Made by a program: the position numbers and the translations under genes
Part shown: piece by piece, positions 2,824 through 39,234 of the stretch
How positions within the stretch are numbered: the stretch's first letter is position 1
Layout of the letters: each line of letters starts with the position of its first letter
Notes under the pieces: model-generated
The model's database searches: none
Seen by the model: the letters and a program-made list of their open reading frames with translations, nothing else
Told to the model about the DNA's origin: nothing
Assembly (NCBI RefSeq): GCF_001194135.2
Contig: NC_068981.1
Coordinates: forward strand, 181,030,282-181,069,818
Length of the DNA: 39,537 nt
Origin: Octopus bimaculoides
Taxonomy: Eukaryota
Direction of reading: 5' to 3'

Positions 2824-2885
<62 letters not shown>

Positions 2886-3133
2886 NNNNNNNNNNNNNNN
2901 NNNNNNNNNNNNNNNNNNNNNNNNNNNNNNNNNNNNNNNNNNNNNNNNNNNNNNNNNNNNNNNNNNNNNNNNNNNNNNNNNNNNNNNNNNNNNNNNNNNN
3001 NNNNNNNNNNNNNNNNNNNNNNNNNNNNNNNNNNNNNNNNNNNNNNNNNNNNNNNNNNNNNNNNNNNNNNNNNNNNNNNNNNNNNNNNNNNNNNNNNNNN
3101 NNNNNNNNNNNNNNNNNNNNNNNNNNNNNNNNN

Positions 3134-3190: not shown

Positions 3191-3798
3191 AACAAAATAT
3201 TTAATCTATAACCAATAAAATGTATTTTGTTGAACTAAGAATTATAGATTAAATATTTTATTCACTCTCAGACTTATCCTGGAGTTGTTTATTCTAAGTG
3301 GCCAGACACAGCTTCTTTTGAACTTGCCAACCCCTGGAATATGTATTTGTTTATTTGCAGTTAAGGCAAAAACTTTGAAAAAGAAAAATAAGAAATTATA
3401 CGACTGGGTTAATTGGTTATTAGCAATCACACGTGTCTTAAAATATATACACTGAAAGTCTTCAAAGTATCAACAGTTTGGCCTGTAGGGAACAGCGATG
3501 TCTGATTTTCAACTTCAGTAATTGATTGTGAAGTTTTATGAAACCACCCATATCTCACCTTGACGATAAGTATTCGTCTTGTTAAAACCCTTGAACAGAG
3601 AGAGGCCAGGTCTCTATAAACCCTCCAGCTATGTAAAGAAGCAATCAGTTGAATCGAAACAATCTTCCAATGTAATTACATATGACAAGTTACCAAACCA
3701 GATCACTATTTCCAATACAGAGATTTGAAAATAAAACAATCTGTTTTTCTTTCAGTGTTACAAAAAAATAAATTTAAAAAGAAGGAGAGGGGGGGGGG

Positions 3799-3986
3799 NN
3801 NNNNNNNNNNNNNNNNNNNNNNNNNNNNNNNNNNNNNNNNNNNNNNNNNNNNNNNNNNNNNNNNNNNNNNNNNNNNNNNNNNNNNNNNNNNNNNNNNNNN
3901 NNNNNNNNNNNNNNNNNNNNNNNNNNNNNNNNNNNNNNNNNNNNNNNNNNNNNNNNNNNNNNNNNNNNNNNNNNNNNNNNNNNNNN
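3799..3986. other. Assembly gap after a G-run
   Basis: N run. Confidence 1.
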
Positions 3987-4359
3987 CCTGAAAACTATCC
4001 AGTTTAGTAGACAAGTAAATCTGTGGAAGCCACTCTGACGAGATGCATTATGGGACACTAATCTAAGAGTTAAAAAAAATAAACAATAAAACAAAAAGGG
4101 GTGGGGAGTTTAAGACCTTCTCTAGGTCAATCATTTAATGTACAAGGAATTTAACCATATTGCCCAGCTTATCTTTTAATCAAATCAAAAGTGCTGTGGT
4201 TTAACTGTGAACACATTCAAACATATTGGAAGCAGCTTTCAAAAATATTTTATCTACAGACAAGTAAAATGACAGAATGAGTAAATGTCAGAATACTTTA
4301 TATATCGTACAAAATGTATTTACTAGGTCTGTTCTCTTCCTCCACTTCCAAGTTAAAAA

Positions 4360-6395: not shown

Positions 6396-6914
6396 NNNNN
6401 NNNNNNNNNNNNNNNNNNNNNNNNNNNNNNNNNNNNNNNNNNNNNNNNNNNNNNNNNNNNNNNNNNNNNNNNNNNNNNNNNNNNNNNNNNNNNNNNNNNN
6501 NNNNNNNNNNNNNNNNNNNNNNNNNNNNNNNNNNNNNNNNNNNNNNNNNNNNNNNNNNNNNNNNNNNNNNNNNNNNNNNNNNNNNNNNNNNNNNNNNNNN
6601 NNNNNNNNNNNNNNNNNNNNNNNNNNNNNNNNNNNNNNNNNNNNNNNNNNNNNNNNNNNNNNNNNNNNNNNNNNNNNNNNNNNNNNNNNNNNNNNNNNNN
6701 NNNNNNNNNNNNNNNNNNNNNNNNNNNNNNNNNNNNNNNNNNNNNNNNNNNNNNNNNNNNNNNNNNNNNNNNNNNNNNNNNNNNNNNNNNNNNNNNNNNN
6801 NNNNNNNNNNNNNNNNNNNNNNNNNNNNNNNNNNNNNNNNNNNNNNNNNNNNNNNNNNNNNNNNNNNNNNNNNNNNNNNNNNNNNNNNNNNNNNNNNNNN
6901 NNNNNNNNNNNNNN

Positions 6915-6965
<51 letters not shown>

Positions 6966-8054: not shown

Positions 8055-8117
8055 TCAGGTTTTGTCTTGTGGCACATTGCCAGGCCGTACAAACTTCTCA
8101 GGGCTTGGTCTGGGTTT
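8055..8117 (-). CDS. CCDC6: CCDC6 terminal coding exon: KPRPSPEKFVRPGNVPQDKT*
   Basis: Acceptor ttttcctttcag ending at 8118; phase 0. SPEKFVRP resembles human SPDKFKRP. Ends with tandem TGA TGA stops (8057-8052). Confidence 0.8.
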   Translation of the reverse strand, partial: KPRPSPEKFVRPGNVPQDKT

Positions 8118-9485: not shown

Positions 9486-9698
9486 TCTTACATATTACGA
9501 AGATCTGGACACTTCATAACTCCAAGCCTTTAGATTCCATCCCAAAGTGTAGCACTTTAGGCAAGAGTCTTCTGTTGTGGCCTGTATTTCATGTGGGCTC
9601 ACTTTCCGCATATCTTTGCATGGAACCATTTGAGAGACGATGATATCATGTTTATGTCCTTTGTAAACAATTTGCCCTGCAGCAATGGCAACATATAT

Positions 9699-10075
9699 AG
9701 GTGCAGGCATGGCTGTGTGGTAAGAAGTTTGCTTCCCAAACACATGGTTCTGGGTTCAGTGCAAGTGCCTTCTACAATAGCCTCAGGCTGACCAAAGCCT
9801 TGTGGGTAGATTTGGCAGGCAGAAACTGAAAATAAATCCTCTGCTTTATATATCTGTGTGTGCATGTCTTTGTGTCTGTGTTTGTCTCCCACCATCATTG
9901 AACAATCAGTGTTGGTGTGTTTATATGCCATAAAACTTAGCAGTTTGGCAAAAGAGACCACTAAAATAACTACCAAGCTTTTTTTTTTAAAAAAAAATGA
10001 AGTATTGGGATTGATTTGCTTGACTAAAATGCTTCAAGGCAGTGCCCCAGCATGGCTGCAATATAATGATGAATC
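9699..10075 (+). mobile_element. tRNA-derived SINE (family B), near full length
   Basis: Head ggtgcaggcatggctgtgtggtaagaagtttgcttcccaa...gggttcagt, body ttctacaatagcctcaggctgaccaaagccttg, tail gcagtgccccagcatggctgca; homologous to several other copies in the window. Confidence 0.8.
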
Positions 10076-10096
10076 CTGTGCAACAGGCTGAATTTG

Positions 10097-10246
10097 TTAC
10101 TCTTTACTCTTGTTTCAGTCATTTGATTGTGGCCATGCTGGAGCAGCACCGCCTTTAGTTGAGCAAATCGACCCCAAGACTTATTCTTTGTAAGCTTGGT
10201 ACTTATTCTATCGGTCTCTTTTGCGGGGACAAACACAGACACACAA

Positions 10247-10313
<67 letters not shown>

Positions 10314-10491
10314 TACATACATACATACGACGGGCTTCTTTCAGTTTCCATCTACCAAATTCACTCACAAAGTTTTGGTCGGCCCAAGGCTATAGTAGAA
10401 GACACTTGCCCATGGTGCCACGCAGTGGGACTGAACCTGGAACCATGTGGTTGGTAAGCAAGCTACTTACCACACAGCCACTTCTGCACCT
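10097..10491 (-). mobile_element. tRNA-derived SINE (family B) with internal (TA)n/(CA)n tract
   Basis: Reverse complement gives the same head, body and tail as 9699-10075. Confidence 0.85.
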
Positions 10492-11039
10492 ATATGTTGT
10501 ATGAAGTTAAATCCCGTCTGATGCTAAATTAAAGAAGACAGTTTGAGTATAAATTGTTCAAGATATTACTAATGTAGAGAATCAAAAACTAAAGATAGTG
10601 TTCTCATAGTTATGTAATTCTGGTGACAGATATTGTAGATACTAGAGTGACTAACTGGACTGAAGGGCCAGGAATAACCAATAATAGACATTCTAGGTTG
10701 ACCAAAATTGAAGAGAGCAAGTTTATTGCTTCCATTCCAGCTTTAGAAGCAAATTAAAGATAAAATATGCAAACAGGTTTATTCTTTAATTTTTCTCGTT
10801 ATGAATCCTGGCCTAACATTTTCAGCAATTTAAGAAACTGCTCAGAAATCTCCACCTACAGCCATATAATGAGATGAGGAAATGAGGAGTATGATGATTT
10901 TTATTCTGGTAAGAAAAATGTACAGTATTCAAATAGGCAAAGACTTAAAAATTAAAAAAACCCGACCTTGGTAGGGAGAGCAAAAAGGTTTGAGTGGACA
11001 TAGTAAGGTACATCTATATTTGTTCTCCTTGATGATTCT

Positions 11040-18622: not shown

Positions 18623-20237
18623 ATAAGAATAATGATACAGTGATTCATTCAAGATTTTCCATATCTCAAACAAATCATAGGTTTAATTTAAGACACTTTT
18701 AGTACTGGAGCTTTGGCAGGTTTCGCAAGTGAAAAAACATTATTTTGGAAGCATAAAATCAAGAGAATGAGTGGGAAAACAATAATAATAGACTAACAAA
18801 GCTCAAAGCTGTCTATACAAAATGTCTTTTTATGATATTCCAAGAGACCTAAATACTGGACTGAAGCATTTTTATAACGGATGGACAAAATGGCCATCAG
18901 ACAAGTGTAGTGTTTATGATAGTATAAACAAAAGCAATGTTTACATGTTTTAATTTATACATATACAGACATTAATATGCCCACACACACATGCATACAT
19001 GAAGTGTATGTCATTTCTGAGAGTGCAATTAAATAAGTAAACATGCTCACCTAGCTATTCCAGATAAAAGGGAGAAAGAAGATTTATACATGGAATCTAA
19101 CCTATCAGTGCTTAATGCTTTAAAATAGAGAGAAAGTAAGACAAGCAAATGTTGGGAAAAAAACAAAAAACAATCATGATAAATTAGAACAGTTGTATTG
19201 ATTGTCATGACAACTTCACTAAATCAACACTAAATCATACCATGATCTCTATAGAACATACCACATTGCATAGAGAGTTGAATAAGTGGGTGGGTGAGTG
19301 AGTGTCTATACAAAACTTGCAGGCAATCTAGATAACATGACAATAGCTAACATTAACATTTACTATCAGGAATTCGCTTTTGTTGATTTTCTTCATAAAA
19401 ACTAAGACAGGGCTTGCGTTCAATACTGGCTGGAAACTCATTGAGTTAGAATGCAATAAAATATATTCTTCTGTTGATAAATGACTAGAAAATTTAAAGA
19501 GAATTAAGCCAACTGAGGAAAATAGATATGTAAATGATAATGAACTGCAATTTTAATAATAATGATGGCATTTGAGATAAAGTATTGTTATTTTTTACTT
19601 GATGAACTTTAACAAATCTCACTTGATATTAGAATGTGTTAGTTCATGTCCCTAAAAAGAAAGAAGAAACATTTAAGTTTCTTCTTTTCATATTTCAGAA
19701 AATAGTTTTGTAAGAATTAATTAGTTGTACATTTTAAATTAGAAATTCAAATCTCTGTAGATAATTCAGAGAACTTATTGAGAATGAGTTAGTGGCTACA
19801 CAGCTGTGAGTTGATACAACTTGACAAAGGTTTTTCAGAAAGTTTTAACTTTTAACACTTTTCAAACTGCATGGAGATGAGAAAAATTAGTGAAAACCAG
19901 TTACCCCAAGTTGATATTTAAATGTATATATATCTGTTCTTCAAATTATTAAGAAGTAAACATCTAAAGGGGTTCAGAAAACAAAAGATTTCCTGAAAAT
20001 GAAGAATAAATGAGTAAAAATATTCAGTTGACTTCTCCTTCAGCTGTCAATGAAGATGTTCTACTGTTAGCAGTAGATCTAGACAAAGTCACCCTAATAA
20101 TGTAAGGAGAAGAGATGTTACAACTTAGGAAAGCCAAGGCTGTATTGATTGTGTATTGAACGCCAACCGTGTTATATCCTAAAATCTACTACAAACAGTA
20201 GCGACACTTCCCTGAGCTCCTCCAACCGGTAACTTAC

Positions 20238-20327
20238 CGTAAGATCTGAGGCGAAGACAGGGGGAGAGCTTCCCAGAAGAAAGGTAGGTGGGTAGAAAGA
20301 CGACTGGTCCTCAGGAGAGTTACTTAC
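20238..20327 (-). CDS. CCDC6: In-frame 30-codon extension of exon 8 via a second donor: VSNSPEDQSSFYPPTFLLGSSPPVFASDLT
   Basis: Diverged tandem copy of the preceding segment, ending in a second ACG/GTAAGT donor (intron from 20237) exactly 90 nt downstream. Most differences are synonymous. Confidence 0.65.
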
Positions 20328-20446
20328 TGTAACGTTTGGACTGTGTGTGAAAACTGGGGGAGAGGTCCCAGGAAGAAATGTGGGTGTGTAGAATGATGGC
20401 TGGCTCCCTGGCGTATTCCGCCGCATTGGACTTGGTGGACTGAAAG
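20328..20446 (-). CDS. CCDC6: Probable CCDC6 exon 8 equivalent, short form: (A)FSPPSPMRRNTPGSQPSFYTPTFLPGTSPPVFTHSPNVT
   Basis: Long polypyrimidine tract plus TAG acceptor (20447-20449), donor GTAAGT from 20327. Phase 1 to 0 bridges exon 7 (ends phase 1) and the last exon (starts phase 0). Ser/Pro-rich and GC-richer than flanks. Similarity to vertebrate exon 8 is compositional only. Confidence 0.75.
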
Positions 20447-20725
20447 CTAAAAAGGAAGAGGAGAAGGAAAAAAAAGGAAAAGAAAAAGGGGGAAGTGCAA
20501 ATATAATTAATTCAACAAATTTGCAAATCACATGGTTCGAGGGAATCTAAATATTCCAGGACTCATAACTTTGCAAAAATTACAAGTGAAAATTAGAAAA
20601 GAATTATGTAGAATATAGTAAATATGGTCGTTATTTCTGTGGATGCCAAGATGAAAATTAAAACAAAGAGAAAATTAATATTTGATATTTCTGTGTTTTA
20701 AATACAAAACCTGTGAAAAGATTTA

Positions 20726-20938
20726 CCCTTTGAGCCAGCCCTGTCTGGCCCATATATTCTACCTCCTATATGTACAAACTGGCTAGATCTAGCCTTTCAC
20801 ACCTATCCTGCAATGTCATTCTAAAAATAAACAATCATGTCACTGAAATCTTGAAGCTATGAGATAATGCATGATTAATTCAAAACAATGTGAATCAAAA
20901 AGCATTATATTTGAATAAACAATCTGAATGCTAAAGGG
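20726..20938. mobile_element. piggyBac-like MITE
   Basis: Ends ttta-CCCTTTGAG ... GAATGCTAAAGGG-ttaa. Inverted homologue of 34588-34807. CCC termini and TTAA target are piggyBac hallmarks. Confidence 0.7.
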
Positions 20939-20972
20939 TTAAAACTTAATTCCAATACTTTATTTGGATTCT

Positions 20973-21197
20973 GTAGAGGAACATGGCTTAATGGTTAGGA
21001 TGTTAGACTCATGATTGTAAGATTGTAATTTCAATTCCTGGACCAGGCAGTGCATTGTGTTCTTGAGCAAAACACTTCATTTCATGTTGTTCCAGTCCAT
21101 TCACAGCTGGCAAAAATGAGTAATCCTGCAACAGACCAGTATCCTGGGTAATAAATGTGCCACAGAAACTGGCCCGAGTCAATATGACTCAAGAAGG
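20973..21197 (+). mobile_element. tRNA-derived SINE (family A)
   Basis: tggcttaatggttagg head and tgtgttcttgagcaaaacacttcatttcatgttg body shared with the 1545-2097 copies. Confidence 0.75.
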
Positions 21198-26292: not shown

Positions 26293-26417
26293 CAGGAGAC
26301 AATGGTCGGGATGTGGTTGGTGAAGCATACGGTATTGGACTGGACACTGTTCGTGGACGGACATTATGACCTTGACTACTCGACATGTCATGTTGCTTTG
26401 TCATTTCATTGAAATGT
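26293..26417 (-). CDS. CCDC6: CCDC6 exon (exon 7 equivalent): (R)HFNEMTKQHDMSSSQGHNVRPRTVSSPIPYASPTTSRPLSP
   Basis: Contains the conserved FNEM and RPRTVSSPIPY..SRP.SP motifs of human CCDC6. TAG acceptor at 26418-26420, donor GTATAT from 26292; 125 bp, phase 2 to 1. Confidence 0.93.
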
Positions 26418-26626: not shown

Positions 26627-27001
26627 ACATTATTTACATTTGACGGATATTTGTTCGCATCTTGTTTGTTGTTAACACAGCATTTTGGCTGATGTACTCT
26701 CCAGCATTCTTCAAGTGTCCTGGGGGAAATTTGAACCTGAGCATATGGCATAGTGGTTAAGAGCACGGGCTACTAACCCCAAGATTCCGAGTTTGATTCC
26801 AGGCAGTGACCTGAATAATGATAACAACAACATTGGAAAAATACCTTAGGAATGAGAACCCAAGTTTGAAATTCCCCAAGACACCTGATGAAGGCTGGAG
26901 AGTACATCAGCTGAAACGTATTAACAACAAACAAGATGGGGACAAATATCCATCAAATGTAAATAATGTACATAATTCCTCATCTCTCAAATACTGAACT
27001 G
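26627..27001. mobile_element. Fold-back tRNA-like/hammerhead element, copy 1 (left arm partly deleted)
   Basis: Right arm 26741-27001 (tRNA-like head, AAT/AAC linker, hammerhead motif, tail ending gaactg-TA) is inverse-homologous to left arm 26627-26738. Same family as 33281-33805. Confidence 0.85.
26881..26920 (+). ncRNA. Degenerate minimal hammerhead motif (stem I partner deleted)
   Basis: acac CTGATGA A GGCTG..CAGCT GAAAC GTA. The gtgtt that forms stem I in the 33.7-kb copy is missing. Confidence 0.45.
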
Positions 27002-27444
27002 TATTAAAGTTATTCAAGCCATGATTATAATTATCCCATTTTTTAAATATTGTTTTGTAATGCAGGACTATGCTGTCCAACAAGTCTCTTTTTAAGATGA
27101 AGGATAGGATGGTGTGATTCAAGGGAGATTTTTTACAGCTGTTTCTAGTAGGTTCAGCCATCCTATTGAAACTACCATGAAGAAACATATGGTGACTCAG
27201 TAAAAAATAAAAATCAATTTTCTCTTTAAAAAAAAAAAAAGGCAAAAAACTTTTAAAGTACTAAAGGGTTCCCAAGACCAATGCTTAAGTTGAGTCCCAA
27301 AGGAGTGAGGGGAGAGATGACTAAGTTAAAAGTTCCTGTCTTGAAATAAACATTCCCAGACCTAGACCCTTGTGGCAGCTGCTACTGTTATGACTGCTAC
27401 TACTTCTTAACTAGAGGCACACAAAGCAGTGTTGACTGAAATAT

Positions 27445-28069: not shown

Positions 28070-28226
28070 CTTTCATCATCCATTTCAAGACTGGATTCAC
28101 TTTCTGAAAGATGCCTACATAGGCTCTCTCGCCGCTCCATCTCCATCTGAAGTTTGCGTTGTAACCGCAAATTCTCTTCCCTGATTTGTCTTTCTTCTTG
28201 TGCATATTGAGCCATTTTCTCTTCAT
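28070..28226 (-). CDS. CCDC6: CCDC6 exon (exon 6 equivalent): (H)[51 protein letters not shown](R)
   Basis: Near-identical to human [55 protein letters not shown] acceptor at 28227-28229, donor GTAGAA from 28069; 157 bp, phase 1 to 2. Confidence 0.95.
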
Positions 28227-32230: not shown

Positions 32231-32388
32231 GTTCTGTTTGAGCTGCTTGTAATTGCTGCTTCAAGCGAGATACCTCAGCTCGGAGGTGTTCTATGTGCTG
32301 GGCAAGGTTCTGTGCAGTGTCTCCATTATTCATATCACGTGGGGAAGGAGGAGAGGACACAGGCTGATCAAGTTTCGCTTGTAACATT
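32231..32388 (-). CDS. CCDC6: CCDC6 exon (exon 5 equivalent): (R)MLQAKLDQPVSSPPSPRDMNNGDTAQNLAQHIEHLRAEVSRLKQQLQAAQTE(H)
   Basis: Matches human ILQEKLDQPVSAPPSPRD...LKKQLRAAQLQH. Acceptor tttcag at 32389-32394, donor GTACGT from 32230; 158 bp, phase 2 to 1, compatible with both neighbours. Confidence 0.95.
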
Positions 32389-33359
32389 CTGAAATAGTAA
32401 TATTGTAAAACTGTTTAAGCTGTTAGAATTGGGGAAGTTCAAAATAAATAGATATCAAGATATGTATGCTTAAGAATGAAGTGTTGGCTCAGTATAGAGC
32501 AGTGATAAGAAAAAGAGATGACAAAGGAATAAATGATTATCTTATGCACTTCATTAGCTTACAACTGTTTCTGCTATAAGATGCAGTGGACTCATAGTTG
32601 AGTGCCTGAATAACTTGACATCTCTCTTTCTTATTATTGCTCTATACTCAGCCAACACTTTGTTCTGAAATAAATGTATATTGAGTTCTACATCAGGTTA
32701 ATGGTCTCACAATGCCCAAGTGAAATATTAAATAAATATCTTTCACAACAACTTACTTGAATAACAGTATTTATTAATAATGATAATGAATTCCCACAGA
32801 GACACAAAAGCCATGTATTACTGAAGAGGGATTAAGCTGATTGAAGTGGCCCATGTAAGTGACTGTGATTATTTTAAGAACCTTCAACAAGGATGAAAAT
32901 CAAAGTCAATCTTGGCGAGATTTTAACTAAGTATATAAACTACAAATACTTGTCAGGTAGTCAATTCCAAAATATTGGCTTTGTGTTTTAAAAAGTTTAA
33001 AAAGGGTTAAGACCCACTTTGGTCATGAATGACCATGGGATTGCACCTAGAAAGTTCCCCTCCAAGGCACAAGTCTGGGAAAGGTTGTTTAGGAAGACCA
33101 GCAGTTGTCCATGAGAGAGGGGGTGTGTGTATATATATGTGCGCATGCATTTTAGTTTTTGTGAATGCCTCACCACTGCTTAACAACCAGCGCTGGTTTA
33201 TGTTCCTGTAATAGCAGTTCAAGCAAGGAGACTGATAAAATAAGTACCAGATTTTTAAAAAAAGTACTGGAGTCAATTTACAGTTCTATATTTAAGAGAT
33301 AAGGAATTATGTACATTATTTATATTAGACGGATATTTGTCCTCATCTTGTTTGTTGTT

Positions 33360-33405
33360 AACACAACGTTTCAGCTGATATACCCTTCAGCCTTCTTCAG
33401 ATGTC
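33360..33405 (-). ncRNA. Minimal type I hammerhead motif (sense to CCDC6)
   Basis: gacat CTGAAGA A GGCTG-aagggtatat-CAGCT GAAAC GTT gtgtt. Intact CUGANGA/GAAA core; stem III reduced to the palindrome ACGT. Confidence 0.65.
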
Positions 33406-33704
33406 TTGGGGAAATTTCGGATCTAGGTTCTCATTCCTAAGATATTTTTCAATTATTCAGGTCACTGCTTGGAATCGAACTCGGAATCTTGGTGTTAGTA
33501 GCCCGCACTCTTAACCACTACGCATATAACCGTGGGCATATGGCATAGTGGTTAAGAGCACAGGCTACTAACCCCAAGATTCCGAGTTTGATTCCAGGCA
33601 GTGACCTGAATAATATTAATATTATTAATAATAATAATGATAATAATAACAACAACATCGAAGAATACCTTAGGAATGAGAACCCAGGTTCAAAATTTCC
33701 CCAA

Positions 33705-33750
33705 GACACCTGAAGAAGGCTGGAGGGTATATCAGCTGAAACGTTGTGTT
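33705..33750 (+). ncRNA. Minimal type I hammerhead motif
   Basis: gacac CTGAAGA A GGCTG-gagggtatat-CAGCT GAAAC GTT gtgtt. Stem I gacac/gtgtt, stem II 33718-22/33733-37; predicted cut after 33745. Confidence 0.7.
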
Positions 33751-34587
33751 AACAACAAACAAGATGAGGACAAATATCCGTCGAATGTAAATAAATGTAA
33801 ATAATGGGGTCAATTTCTTTGACTAAACACCTCAGCATGACCATAGACCAATGACTAAAACAAGATAGAAAAATACTGTAATGGTGAAACCGCAGTCCAT
33901 GAGTGGAGGGATTATAGGTAAAATATTACTACTCCAATAACTTTGAAACTACTAAACATGATGTAAAAACACACCACCTCTGAGCAGTGACTGTAGAATC
34001 ACTTTGCAATCCAGCTGTAATCCATTAGTCTAAAAGGAACACTGCTGAAGACATTGCTTTCAATTAGTGTGTGACAGACAAAAATCAGTCAACCAGATCC
34101 CAGCTGTTCAAATTATAGAGTGAAGCTGAGCTCTTAAGCTAGGAGCCATTATAAGCAGCTTCACCCTTTGAATTCCAAACTGCCTTTAGTTCTATGATAC
34201 AAAATTTTGTGCTTTAAAGAATTCATTAAAACCTCATGTCATAACTATGTATGAATATCAATTTAATAATAAAAATAATAATTGTTTGAAATTTTGGCAC
34301 AATACTAACAATTTTGAAAGGAGGTGAAGTCAATTGCATTGCTCTCAGCACTCAACTGGCACTTTATTTTACTGATCCCTAAAAGGATGAACAGCCCTTG
34401 GTGGCATTTGAACTTGGAACATAAATGGTTGGCAGAAAGGCCACTGGGCATTTTCTCTCGTGTGATAATGATTTAGCCAGCTTCCCACCTTAAGATCAAT
34501 AATAAACACTCCTCCCAAAATCTTGATTATTTTCAAGATTAACTGAAACAGAGGCAGTATATTTCTTTCAGTCACAAAAATGTTTAA

Positions 34588-34807
34588 CCCCTTAGCATTC
34601 ATATTACTCTGCCAAAAGTAATGCATATTTATTCACATCATTTTGAATTAATCATGCATTGTCTCATAGCTTTGAGATTTCAATGATATGAATGTTTATT
34701 TATAGAATAGTATTGGTATTGTAGAAGGTGTGAGAGGCCAGATTTGGTTTGAACATAAAACAGGTAGAACATTTAGGCTGGATATGGCCAGCTTGACTGC
34801 TAAAGAG
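34588..34807. mobile_element. piggyBac-like MITE with TTAA flanks on both sides
   Basis: TTAA(34584-87)-CCCCTTAGCATTC ... GACTGCTAAAGAG-TTAA(34808-11); interior homologous (inverted) to 20726-20938. Confidence 0.75.
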
Positions 34808-36217: not shown

Positions 36218-36321
36218 CTTTTCTCTGCTTCTAATTTATCCATCCGTTTCCACAGCCTGTTCACAAGTGATTCTTGTTCCTGTTCAAGAGCATTTTCCAA
36301 TTCAACTTTTTCTCGGCGCAA
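36218..36321 (-). CDS. CCDC6: CCDC6 orthologue, internal exon (equivalent to vertebrate exon 4): [34 protein letters not shown](R)
   Basis: Minus-strand translation closely matches recalled human CCDC6 [35 protein letters not shown]. Acceptor ttttag at 36322-36327, donor GTAAAT from 36217; 104 bp, phase 0 to 2. Too short for the ORF track. Confidence 0.95.
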
Positions 36322-37928: not shown

Positions 37929-38476
37929 TAGATGTGGGGGATGAGTGAGGGGTTAAGAAGTTTGCTTCTTAACTTGTGGTTTCGGGTACAGTCCAATTGT
38001 GTGGCACCTTATGCAAGTGTCTTCTACTACAGACCTGAGTCAACCAATGCCTTGTTAGCAAATTTGCTAAGCAGAAACTGTGTAGAATTTTTTCTTTTAT
38101 CATTTACATGTATCAATTACTAGATTGTGGCCATGCTGGGGCACCACCTTCAAGATATTTTAGCTGAATGAATTGACCCCAGTACTTTTTTTTTTAAAGT
38201 CTGGTACTTATTCTATCAGTCTCTTCTGCCAAACTGATAAGTTACAGTGATTAAACATACCAACACTAGCTGTCGAGTGGTGGTGGGGAACAAACACAGT
38301 CACACACACACACACGGGTTTCTTTCAGTTTCCATTTCCAAATCCACTAACAAGGCTTTGGTCAGCCTGAGGCTATAGTAGAAGGTACTTGCCCAAGGTG
38401 CCACACAATGGGAGTGAACTCAAAAACTACGTATTTGGGAAGCAAGCTTCTTATTTTACAGCCACACCTGCACCTA
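37929..38476. mobile_element. Two family B SINEs in inverted orientation: plus head at 37929-38080, minus copy at 38121-38476
   Basis: ggttaagaagtttgctt..ggtttcgggtacagtcc..caagtgtcttctacta on plus; gccacacctgcacctat...gaccccagtac...gtggccatgctgggg on minus. Confidence 0.7.
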
Positions 38477-39234
38477 TATATGTTATCATTTAACAACCAC
38501 TTTTCCATACTTCCACAGCTTAGTCAGAATTTGTTGTGGTATGTTTTCTATGGCCAGATGCTCTGTCTGCAGTCAGCCCTCCTCTGTTTATATTTCCAAG
38601 TGATATTCCAGAGGTTTATATTTCCAGGAAATATTTCAAAGGTAATATTTCCAAACATCTTTTTCAAAGAAGACTGGAAACAAACATCACTCGCATGACA
38701 GTGATGCACATTTACAACCAACACGATATCAAGACAAGGGAATTCACAAACATACACACACACATATACACACAGAAGACTGTACCTAGCTCAATTGTTT
38801 TGTTTTGGTATTGTGTTCATGGATGGCTACCCTTCCAATTGCCAACCACTTTACAGAGTGGACTGGATATTTTTTTCTTGTGGCACCAACACATGCAACG
38901 TTTTATACACACACATAATTGGATATATATATATATATATTTCAATACGGAGCAAATAATTCAAGAGAAAATATTTGCTAAGATATTATTGACTTTATTA
39001 TTATCTAGTGTAACAATTAAAAATAATAACAGAATCAATAATATAGGTGATTGCAGGCCCAAAAAGCATTAAATAGCCGAAGAATTAAAATTAATCAAAG
39101 GACATAGTAAGTATGTCTACCTGCTGGAAATAACAGTCAAAACTCTTTCGTAATTTAAATAAGAGTTTTGACTTATTTCCAGCAGACTATATACTTAGTA
39201 TGTCCTTTGATTAATTTTATATATATATATATAT

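What the first reader, a model, noticed from the sequence alone, without database searches (positions are those of the whole stretch)
20238..20446. CCDC6 exon 8 holds an internal 30-codon duplication, each copy ending in its own in-frame GTAAGT donor
Seen: NTPGSQPSFYTPTFLPGTSPPVFTHSPNVT/VS versus NSPEDQSSFYPPTFLLGSSPPVFASDLT/VS. Over the 16 aligned core codons (SFY...PVF), 13 residues are identical, with six synonymous third-position changes and three amino-acid changes. The donors at 20327 and 20237 are 90 nt apart, both phase 0, and both fit the terminal exon. Inference: both copies are under protein-level selection, and alternative 5' splice-site choice sets one or two Ser/Thr-Pro-rich modules (candidate proline-directed phosphosites) in the tail. 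I do not recall this repeat in vertebrate CCDC6.
Basis: partly seen in the sequence, partly recalled or inferred. Interest (0 to 1): 0.7.

Follow-up and report, generated by a model that had tools for sequence, protein, structure and literature searches.

The report
Duplicated exon end with two donors
The second-to-last coding exon of a mollusc CCDC6 gene carries an old 90-base tandem copy of its own 3' end and splice donor, so it could be spliced short or long (30 extra residues); whether the long form is made could not be tested here.

Summary
On the minus strand, the CCDC6 exon that begins at 20446 ends in two adjacent copies of one unit. Each copy closes with GTAAGT. The exon ends at 20328 or 20238, 90 nt apart and both in phase 0, and both read into the terminal exon at 8117.

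The repeat is real: a 55-nt core is 78% identical (blastn E 4e-7), there are only two copies, and none lies elsewhere in the window. It is too diverged to be an assembly artefact.

It is a lineage-specific insertion. Every CCDC6 I could reach has one module: bivalves, hemichordates, an echinoderm and two arthropod-like sequences at protein level, and four exon-8 loci read as DNA. The two bivalve exons have one phase-0 donor at the same place and nothing behind it.

Copy 1 is constrained in any case. The relevant null (copy 2 neutral) is rejected only marginally (p about 0.02-0.08).

Donor 2 pairs with U1 better than donor 1 and better than every other donor of the gene that lies in the window, so some use of it is likely. 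No transcript and no close relative could be reached.

Verdict: a candidate alternative 5' splice site made by a junction duplication. This is a known kind of event, of modest interest.

The parts
26293..26417 (-). CCDC6 coding exon 7 (RHFNEMTKQHDM...SRPLSP, ends in phase 1; donor GT at 26292-26291)
   Evidence: tblastn with bivalve CCDC6; sequence; joined translation
20449..20495 (-). Polypyrimidine tract in front of the exon-8 acceptor (AG at 20448-20447); a second AG lies 7 nt further on at 20441-20440
   Evidence: Sequence; TRF low-complexity AAAAGG row at 20450-20489
20328..20446 (-). Exon 8, short form (119 nt): (A)FSPPSPMRR plus module copy 1. This is the part orthologous to exon 8 of other animals
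   Evidence: Alignment A1; tblastn; Mytilus and Potamilus exons; translation
20322..20417 (-). Repeat copy 1 (96 nt): 30 codons NTPGSQ...SPNVT plus donor hexamer GTAAGT (20327-20322). Context ACA|GTAAGTAA, U1 duplex -7.2 kcal/mol
20232..20321 (-). Repeat copy 2 (90 nt): 28 codons NSPEDQ...ASDLT plus donor hexamer GTAAGT (20237-20232). Context ACG|GTAAGTTA, U1 duplex -9.3 kcal/mol. Absent from all other CCDC6 examined
20238..20327 (-). The 90-nt extension that is exonic only if donor 2 is used. It adds VSNSPEDQSSFYPPTFLLGSSPPVFASDLT (30 aa) in frame
8055..8117 (-). Coding part of the terminal exon (phase-0 acceptor, KPRPSPEKFVRPGNVPQDKT, stop TGA at 8057-8055)

Best explanation
An old tandem duplication of about 90 nt, private to this lineage, copied the last 30 or so codons of CCDC6 coding exon 8 together with the first six bases of intron 8. 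The exon therefore has two consensus donors, 90 nt apart and in the same phase.

I think the most likely reading is that donor 2 is still used in at least part of the transcripts, and that the exon is an alternative-5'-splice-site exon. Donor 1 gives the ancestral tail with one F-Y-x-P...G-[TS]-S-P-P-V-F module. Donor 2 gives a tail with a second, more diverged module (+30 aa). Both tails lie in the disordered Ser/Thr/Pro-rich region and neither changes the frame or the stop.

**Shown:** the duplication, its boundaries, its lineage specificity, the two intact donors and their relative U1 complementarity, and frame compatibility.

**Inferred:** use of donor 2, any regulation of the choice, and any function of the extra module (for example further proline-directed phosphosites).
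For: 1. The direct repeat is real and exactly tandem. There is no third copy and it is not part of a dispersed repeat.
2. One module is the ancestral state. Eleven other CCDC6 proteins have one. The Mytilus and Potamilus exon-8 loci, read as DNA, have one module and one phase-0 donor at the homologous spot; those two and two further animal contigs show no second module anywhere in the locus.
3. Both donors are perfect GTAAGT. Donor 2 has the consensus G at -1 and the best U1 duplex of the gene's donors in the window: -9.3 kcal/mol, against -7.2 for donor 1 and -3.4 to -6.8 for the others. From established splicing knowledge, a consensus donor 90 nt from another is rarely silent, and of two duplicated strong donors the downstream one tends to be preferred.
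4. Copy 2 keeps an open frame, differs in length by a multiple of three (6 nt), and keeps 17 of 28 residues although half of its third positions differ from copy 1.
5. Under neutral decay at the divergence that best fits that null (0.4-0.5 substitutions per site), the joint chance of no stop, an intact GTAAGT and at least 17/28 identity is about 0.01 or less.
6. Codon-model tests of omega(copy 2) = 1 give p about 0.02-0.05.
Against: - No transcript evidence of any kind.
- No orthologous copy 2 from a related species could be obtained, so conservation of copy 2 is unknown.
- The selection tests are marginal, rest on 28 codons and depend on a poorly determined synonymous distance. If the duplication is younger (0.2 substitutions per site), the neutral model explains an open frame plus an intact donor with probability about 0.2.
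- Differences by codon position (8:5:15) are near the 1:1:2 expected if only copy 1 is constrained.
- Polarised replacements lean towards copy 2 (6 against 2; not significant, p = 0.29). That fits relaxed constraint.
- A duplication of this kind is silent at the mRNA level if donor 1 is always chosen, which is a simple way for it to have been tolerated.
Confidence: 0.55

Rival explanations
1. Copy 2 is a decaying intronic relic. The junction duplication was tolerated because donor 1 kept being used, so the mRNA never changed. Donor 2 is an unused or rarely used decoy 90 nt into the 12-kb intron, and the open frame is a leftover.
For: - The pairwise statistics are close to what this model predicts: differences by codon position are 8:5:15 against an expected 1:1:2, and omega = 0.5 is rejected only at one-sided p 0.02-0.08.
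- Copy 2 carries most of the polarisable replacements (6 against 2), including P to L and T to S inside the otherwise strongly conserved L-P-G-T-S-P-P-V motif.
- About 60% of neutral 28-codon copies stay free of stops at 0.4-0.5 substitutions per site.
- No protein among 5.8 billion clusters or 1.84 billion representatives shows a two-module tail. This is weak, because no close relative is in those libraries.
Against: - The donor hexamer and its flanks (TTACNGTAAGTNAC, 12 of 14) are the best-kept part of the unit's 3' half, although the adjacent codons have diverged and carry an indel.
- P(GTAAGT intact) is about 0.05-0.12 at the fitted neutral distance.
- Only one indel is seen, and it is in frame.
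- Donor 2 is the stronger U1 match, so silencing it completely would need extra elements.
- The likelihood prefers omega(copy 2) about 0.24-0.6.
Confidence: 0.3
2. Donor 2 is the constitutive donor and the internal GTAAGT at 20327 is not used. The protein of this lineage then always has two modules, and there is no alternative splicing.
For: Donor 2 has G at -1 and the best U1 pairing, while donor 1 has the non-consensus A at -1. From general knowledge, in duplicated-donor constructs the downstream site is usually preferred. The frame is open through GTA AGT, read as Val-Ser.
Against: A perfect GTAAGT inside an exon with an adequate U1 duplex (-7.2 kcal/mol, better than four other donors of the same gene) is unlikely to be ignored completely. 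If it were never used, nothing would keep it intact, yet all six bases are kept.
Confidence: 0.12
3. There is no real duplication: the similarity is chance in a low-complexity Pro/Ser-rich exon, or the second copy is an assembly artefact of a gap-rich draft.
For: The window is a draft with many N runs and microsatellites. Tandem Repeats Finder does not call the array.
Against: - The 55-nt ungapped match has E = 3.8e-7 within the window, lies exactly adjacent, and has a second in-register match at the donors.
- The two copies differ at 26-28 of 84 aligned bases plus a 6-nt indel. An assembly duplication would be near-identical.
- No N run lies within 20000-20700.
Confidence: 0.03

Closest known systems
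Alternative 5' splice-site (A5SS) exons with in-frame competing donors
   Same: One acceptor, two donors in the same phase and a multiple of three apart. Both products keep the downstream frame and stop, and the variable segment lies in a disordered tail.
   Different: Use of both donors is not shown here. From general knowledge (for example Koren, Lev-Maor and Ast 2007), most described A5SS exons are thought to arise from point mutations that create a competing site. Here the second site is a copy of the first.
Splice sites moved or gained by tandem duplication (proto-splice-site duplication and intron sliding; Lehmann et al. 2010, PMC2891723)
   Same: A short tandem duplication within a gene carries a splice signal. 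That paper notes that when the duplication is a multiple of three it allows differential splice patterns as a temporary or permanent alternative.
   Different: Those cases duplicate an exonic AG|GY proto-splice site and create a new intron between the copies. Here the duplication spans an existing exon-intron junction and duplicates only the donor. No new intron arises; the existing intron simply gets two possible starts.
Internal tandem repeats that remodel gene structure (De Grassi and Ciccarelli 2009, PMC2812944) and splice sites carried in tandem arrays (Zhuo et al. 2007, known to me from memory and from its appearance in reference lists)
   Same: Repeat units inside genes that carry splice signals and so change exon boundaries.
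   Different: Those are mostly young primate arrays with many units. This one has two old units (third positions about 50% different) in a conserved single-copy gene. I read only the abstract line of PMC2812944.
Tandem exon duplication with mutually exclusive splicing (Kondrashov and Koonin 2001; Letunic et al. 2002; from general knowledge)
   Same: A tandem duplicate of coding sequence provides alternative protein segments.
   Different: Copy 2 has no acceptor or polypyrimidine tract of its own. It directly abuts the GTAAGT of donor 1, so it can only extend the exon and cannot replace copy 1.
Human CCDC6 C-terminal tail with phospho-degrons (S359, S413, T427; CDK1/GSK3 then FBXW7; PMC4494967)
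   Same: Same protein and same general region, downstream of the DUF2046 coiled coil. It is rich in S/T-P sites and known in human to control turnover through phosphorylation.
   Different: I did not establish residue-level correspondence between the mollusc module and the human degron residues. No duplication is seen in the vertebrate hits.

Membership tests
CCDC6 (Pfam PF09755, DUF2046/H4) orthologue | Significant match to the family profile | tested here: met
   PF09755 E = 2.6e-71, 240.7 bits against a cut-off of 24.7, profile positions 162-305 of 305. All 120 listed homologues carry PF09755.
CCDC6 (Pfam PF09755, DUF2046/H4) orthologue | Conserved exon structure and tail motifs (AFSPPSPMRR, GTSPPV, KPRPSxEKFxRP); eighth of nine coding exons | tested here: met
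   tblastn places six collinear exons in the window. Mytilus has 9 coding exons and the homologous exon is number 8. Tail alignment. The N-terminal 167 or so residues lie outside the window.
Alternative 5' splice-site exon | Two or more donor sites downstream of one acceptor, each a plausible U1 target | tested here: met
   ACA|GTAAGT at 20328/20327 and ACG|GTAAGT at 20238/20237. U1 duplex -7.2 and -9.3 kcal/mol, the two best donors of the gene in the window.
Alternative 5' splice-site exon | Both donors joined to the same downstream acceptor in mature mRNA | not testable with these tools
   No RNA-seq or cDNA is available. No protein with either junction is in the libraries.
Alternative 5' splice-site exon | Both products keep the reading frame | tested here: met
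   119 nt or 209 nt, a difference of 90 nt. Both read into KPRPSPEKF... and the same stop.
Tandem duplication across an exon-intron junction | Two adjacent direct copies without spacer, each including the splice signal | tested here: met
   Copy 1 at 20417-20322 and copy 2 at 20321-20232, each ending in GTAAGT. No third copy and none elsewhere.
Tandem duplication across an exon-intron junction | Single-copy state in outgroups (derived insertion) | tested here: met
   One module in 11 proteins and at 4 exon-8 loci; the two bivalve loci were also read as DNA. None of the 5 representative hits covers copy 2.
Coding sequence under purifying selection (copy 2) | dN/dS on the copy 2 lineage significantly below 1 | tested here: inconclusive
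   Pairwise test of omega = 0.5: one-sided p 0.02-0.08 depending on gap placement. Branch model with clock and free stem omega: LRT about 4.3, p about 0.04, omega2 0.24-0.64. An earlier LRT of 11.9 was a model artefact.
Mutually exclusive tandem exons | Each copy has its own acceptor and donor | tested here: not met
   Copy 2 starts immediately after the GTAAGT of donor 1, with no Py tract or AG acceptor.

The most novel reading that the evidence does not exclude
Choice between the two duplicated donors is regulated, by tissue, stage or cell cycle. It sets whether this lineage's CCDC6 carries one or two copies of an ancient tail motif (F-[HY]-x-P...G-[TS]-S-P-P-V), which molluscs, hemichordates and an echinoderm all share. 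The number of proline-directed phosphosites or docking sites, and with it protein turnover or partner binding, would then be tuned by splicing. That would be a clean natural case of a short linear motif being dosed through a junction duplication.
Probability: 0.15. Interest if true: 0.45.

Novelty: new member of a known kind. Interest (0 to 1): 0.3.

Why it matters
If donor 2 is used, this is a tidy, datable example of one small tandem duplication producing, in a single step, an in-frame alternative 5' splice site and a second copy of a conserved linear motif in a disordered tail. The gene is otherwise very conservative.

It would also bear on gene annotation in this genome. A gene model that picks only one donor would miss an isoform.

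If donor 2 is not used, the case shows how junction duplications can be neutral, and how a consensus decoy donor can persist in an intron. Either way the consequence is local to one gene.

Tried and rejected
1. **Close relatives and transcripts.**
   - Two word-indexed protein searches were run: the long-isoform tail, and the genomic read-through ORF of exon 8.
   - One exhaustive HMMER search of 1.84 billion representatives and one scan of JGI metagenome contigs were also run.
- None found anything closer than bivalves, and none covered copy 2.
   - Look-ups of the isoform-X2 proteins P0005 and P0003 failed, because only the longest product per gene is on record.
2. **First branch-model test.** It gave LRT 11.9 for neutrality of copy 2. 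I rejected it as an artefact. The stem branch shared its omega with the outgroups, so the alternative model absorbed the long stem into the copy branches. With a free stem omega the LRT falls to about 4.3. An earlier unvectorised run timed out.
3. **RNA structure.** The fold of 20180-20470 is no more stable than shuffles (z = -0.06), so there is no structural switch.
4. **A third partial copy.** After donor 2 the match is not better than shuffles. Upstream, family D6 (12 nt) is of the same quality as other chance families in that scan.
5. **Faster evolution of copy 2.** Six derived residues against two, p = 0.29. This is a trend only.
6. **Rfam.** A scan of the window found nothing.
7. **Literature.** A search for CCDC6 in cephalopods gave two irrelevant papers.
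8. **Pfam scan of intronic ORFs.** It was abandoned after a coordinate error and is not relevant to the finding.
9. **Mutually exclusive exons, chance similarity and assembly artefact.** Considered and rejected; see the rival explanations and the membership test.

Full report
**What is there**

The finding lies on the minus strand. After a polypyrimidine tract of about 47 nt and the AG at 20448-20447, an open frame starts at 20446. It reads (A)FSPPSPMRR NTPGSQPSFYTPTFLPGTSPPVFTHSPNVT, then GTAAGT (20327-20322). It continues NSPEDQSSFYPPTFLLGSSPPVFASDLT, then GTAAGT again (20237-20232).

The repeat finder reports a 55-nt ungapped pair at 78% identity (20253-20307 and 20349-20403, spacing 96). 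It also reports a 14-nt pair around the two donors at 86% (spacing 90). A 6-nt in-frame indel therefore separates the core from the donor.

blastn of the region against the whole window gives this pair E = 3.8e-7 and finds no other copy in 39.5 kb. There is no third, partial copy after donor 2. The dispersed repeats in the neighbouring intron do not reach the exon.

The copies differ at 26-28 of 84 aligned bases, so this is not an assembly duplication. No N run is near.

**The gene and the reading frames**

tblastn with bivalve CCDC6 proteins places six collinear exons in the window. With corrected boundaries they are 36218-36321, 32231-32388, 28070-28226, 26293-26417, 20328/20238-20446 and 8117 downwards.

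The encoded partial protein matches PF09755 (DUF2046, 'H4') at 2.6e-71. The Ser/Thr/Pro-rich tail made by exons 7-9 lies outside the domain. The first 167 or so residues lie outside the window.

Exon 7 ends in phase 1. The 119-nt and the 209-nt versions of the next exon both restore phase 0, and both read into KPRPSPEKFVRPGNVPQDKT*. In Mytilus coruscus the gene has nine coding exons and the homologous exon is the eighth, so 'exon 8' is a fair label.

**The second copy is a derived insertion**

Eleven other CCDC6 proteins were aligned: four bivalves, Haliotis, three hemichordates, a crinoid and two arthropod-like sequences. None shows a second module in the tail. Ten have a single module, and the whole of copy 2 aligns to a gap in all eleven. 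The Haliotis sequence is the exon-8-skipping isoform and lacks the module altogether.

Genomic DNA shows the same in Mytilus and Potamilus. Each has one module, one phase-0 donor at the homologous place (..SPMQ|gtaatt and ..MTNIQ|gtaaat), and nothing resembling a second module in the intron behind it. The same holds for two compact CCDC6 genes on eukaryotic contigs in ENA metagenome assemblies (L003 and L004).

An exhaustive HMMER search of 1.84 billion representative proteins with the long tail returned five hits. All match copy 1 only.

Copy 1 is the orthologous one. It is contiguous with the rest of the exon and keeps L-P-G-T-S-P-P-V exactly as in bivalves.

**Is copy 2 under selection?**

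- *Pairwise codon maximum likelihood.* It gives omega = 0.14-0.22 and rejects omega = 1 (p = 0.001-0.006). That only shows that at least one copy is constrained, and copy 1 certainly is.
- *The relevant null.* If copy 2 is neutral and copy 1 is perfectly constrained, the pairwise omega is 0.5. That null is rejected at one-sided p = 0.02-0.08, depending on where the 2-codon gap is placed.
- *Codon positions.* Differences by position are 8:5:15. This is near the 1:1:2 that the null predicts before correction for multiple hits.
- *Branch model.* I added four outgroup exon sequences and imposed a clock on the two copies. My first version gave LRT 11.9. I traced that to a model artefact: the stem branch shared the outgroups' omega. 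With a free stem omega, the best likelihood is -375.7 (omega2 about 0.24). The best with omega2 = 1 is about -377.9. That gives LRT about 4.3 and p about 0.04.
- *Polarised replacements.* They lean to copy 2, 6 against 2, but not significantly (p = 0.29).
- *Neutral simulations.* At the divergence that best fits the null (0.4-0.5 substitutions per site), a neutral copy keeps GTAAGT intact in about 5-12% of runs and stays free of stops in about 60%. It does both, while also keeping at least 17 of 28 residues, in 1% of runs or fewer. At 0.2 substitutions per site the joint figure is about 20%.

Taken together the evidence favours constraint on copy 2 and its donor, but only at the p = 0.02-0.07 level and on 28 codons.

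**Splicing potential**

Both donors are perfect at +1 to +6. Donor 2 (ACG|GTAAGTTA) also has the consensus G at -1, and it gives the best duplex with the U1 5' end: -9.3 kcal/mol. Donor 1 (ACA|GTAAGTAA) gives -7.2, and the gene's other four donors in the window give -3.4 to -6.8. The U1 sequence was taken from general knowledge.

The local RNA fold is no more stable than shuffles (z = -0.06), so nothing suggests that either site is sequestered.

From established splicing work with duplicated donors, two strong sites this close normally compete, and the downstream one is often preferred. I therefore think some use of donor 2 is more likely than not. This is an inference, not an observation.

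**Mechanism proposed**

A tandem duplication of about 90 nt, with one breakpoint in the exon (before the Asn codon at 20417) and the other just after intron position +6, produced exon-part, donor, exon-part, donor.

Because the unit is a multiple of three and the donor is in phase 0, either donor gives an in-frame mRNA. The duplication could therefore be tolerated whichever site was used. Donor 1 leaves the ancestral protein. Donor 2 inserts Val-Ser (the read-through GTA AGT) plus a second module.

Each module carries S/T-P sites: six in the short exon and two in the insert.

In human CCDC6 the tail is known to carry CDK1/GSK3-dependent FBXW7 degrons at S359, S413 and T427 (PMC4494967). I did not establish residue-level homology to those sites. 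The phospho-module idea remains a hypothesis.

**Comparison with what is known**

The event belongs to known categories. Alternative 5' splice-site exons are common. [quoted passage not shown] Internal tandem repeats are known to remodel gene structures (PMC2812944).

This case differs from proto-splice-site duplication because it spans an existing junction and duplicates only the donor. It differs from mutually exclusive tandem exons because copy 2 has no acceptor.

I found nothing in the paper library about CCDC6 in cephalopods.

**Limits**

The nearest sequences available are bivalves and a gastropod.
- No close relative and no transcript were reachable. The decisive tests, junction reads and orthologous copy 2 sequences, remain to be done.

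**Verdict**

- The feature is a new member of a known kind.
- Interest is about 0.3.

Noticed in passing
window 20440-20448 (minus strand): The exon-8 acceptor has two AGs 7 nt apart (tttttAG|CTTTCAG|TCC). Homology to AFSPPSPMRR in bivalves supports the first. Use of the second would shift the frame and put the TAA inside donor 1's GTAAGT in frame.
   Followed up: partly
window 26293 joined to 8117; protein P0005: Skipping exon 8 (119 nt, not a multiple of 3) would give the frameshifted tail ...SPETQTKP*. The annotated Haliotis rufescens CCDC6-like isoform X2 (P0005) ends with the homologous frameshift reading (ETQTQPRKICK...). Exon-8 skipping is therefore at least predicted in another mollusc.
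   Followed up: partly
window 20446 compared with L001 18872 and L002 27793: Compared with bivalves (SPG-[MI]-[NP]-Y-P-AFSPPSP), the window's exon 8 starts 4-5 codons later (SP-AFSPPSP). The acceptor has shifted, or those codons were lost in this lineage.
   Followed up: no
window 20172-20237 (minus strand): The frame stays open for 21 more codons past donor 2 (VSYRLEELREVSLLFVVDFRI, stop TAA at 20174-20172). Retention of the intron would give a different short tail.
   Followed up: no
window 26627-27003 with 33279-33805; 9684-10495 with 38121-38490; 20748-20943 with 34583-34778; 1662-2116 with 20977-21099: Several families of interspersed repeats (69-87% identity, both orientations) fill the CCDC6 introns. 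One pair lies only about 300 nt upstream of exon 8 but does not overlap it. Some translate to a recurring '...GSKLLTTQP.LHLY...' string.
   Followed up: no
window about 2850-3130, 3780-3990, 6400-6920, 9250, 15560: Runs of N flanked by (TA)n or other microsatellites show that the window comes from a gap-rich draft assembly. None is close to exon 8.
   Followed up: no
L003 (ENA ERZ25767047) and L004 (ENA ERZ23495691): Two metagenome assemblies contain animal contigs with compact CCDC6 genes (exons 5-9 within about 4 kb in L004). Their exon 8 has SPPVF like the window but a single module. The organisms are not identified.
   Followed up: partly
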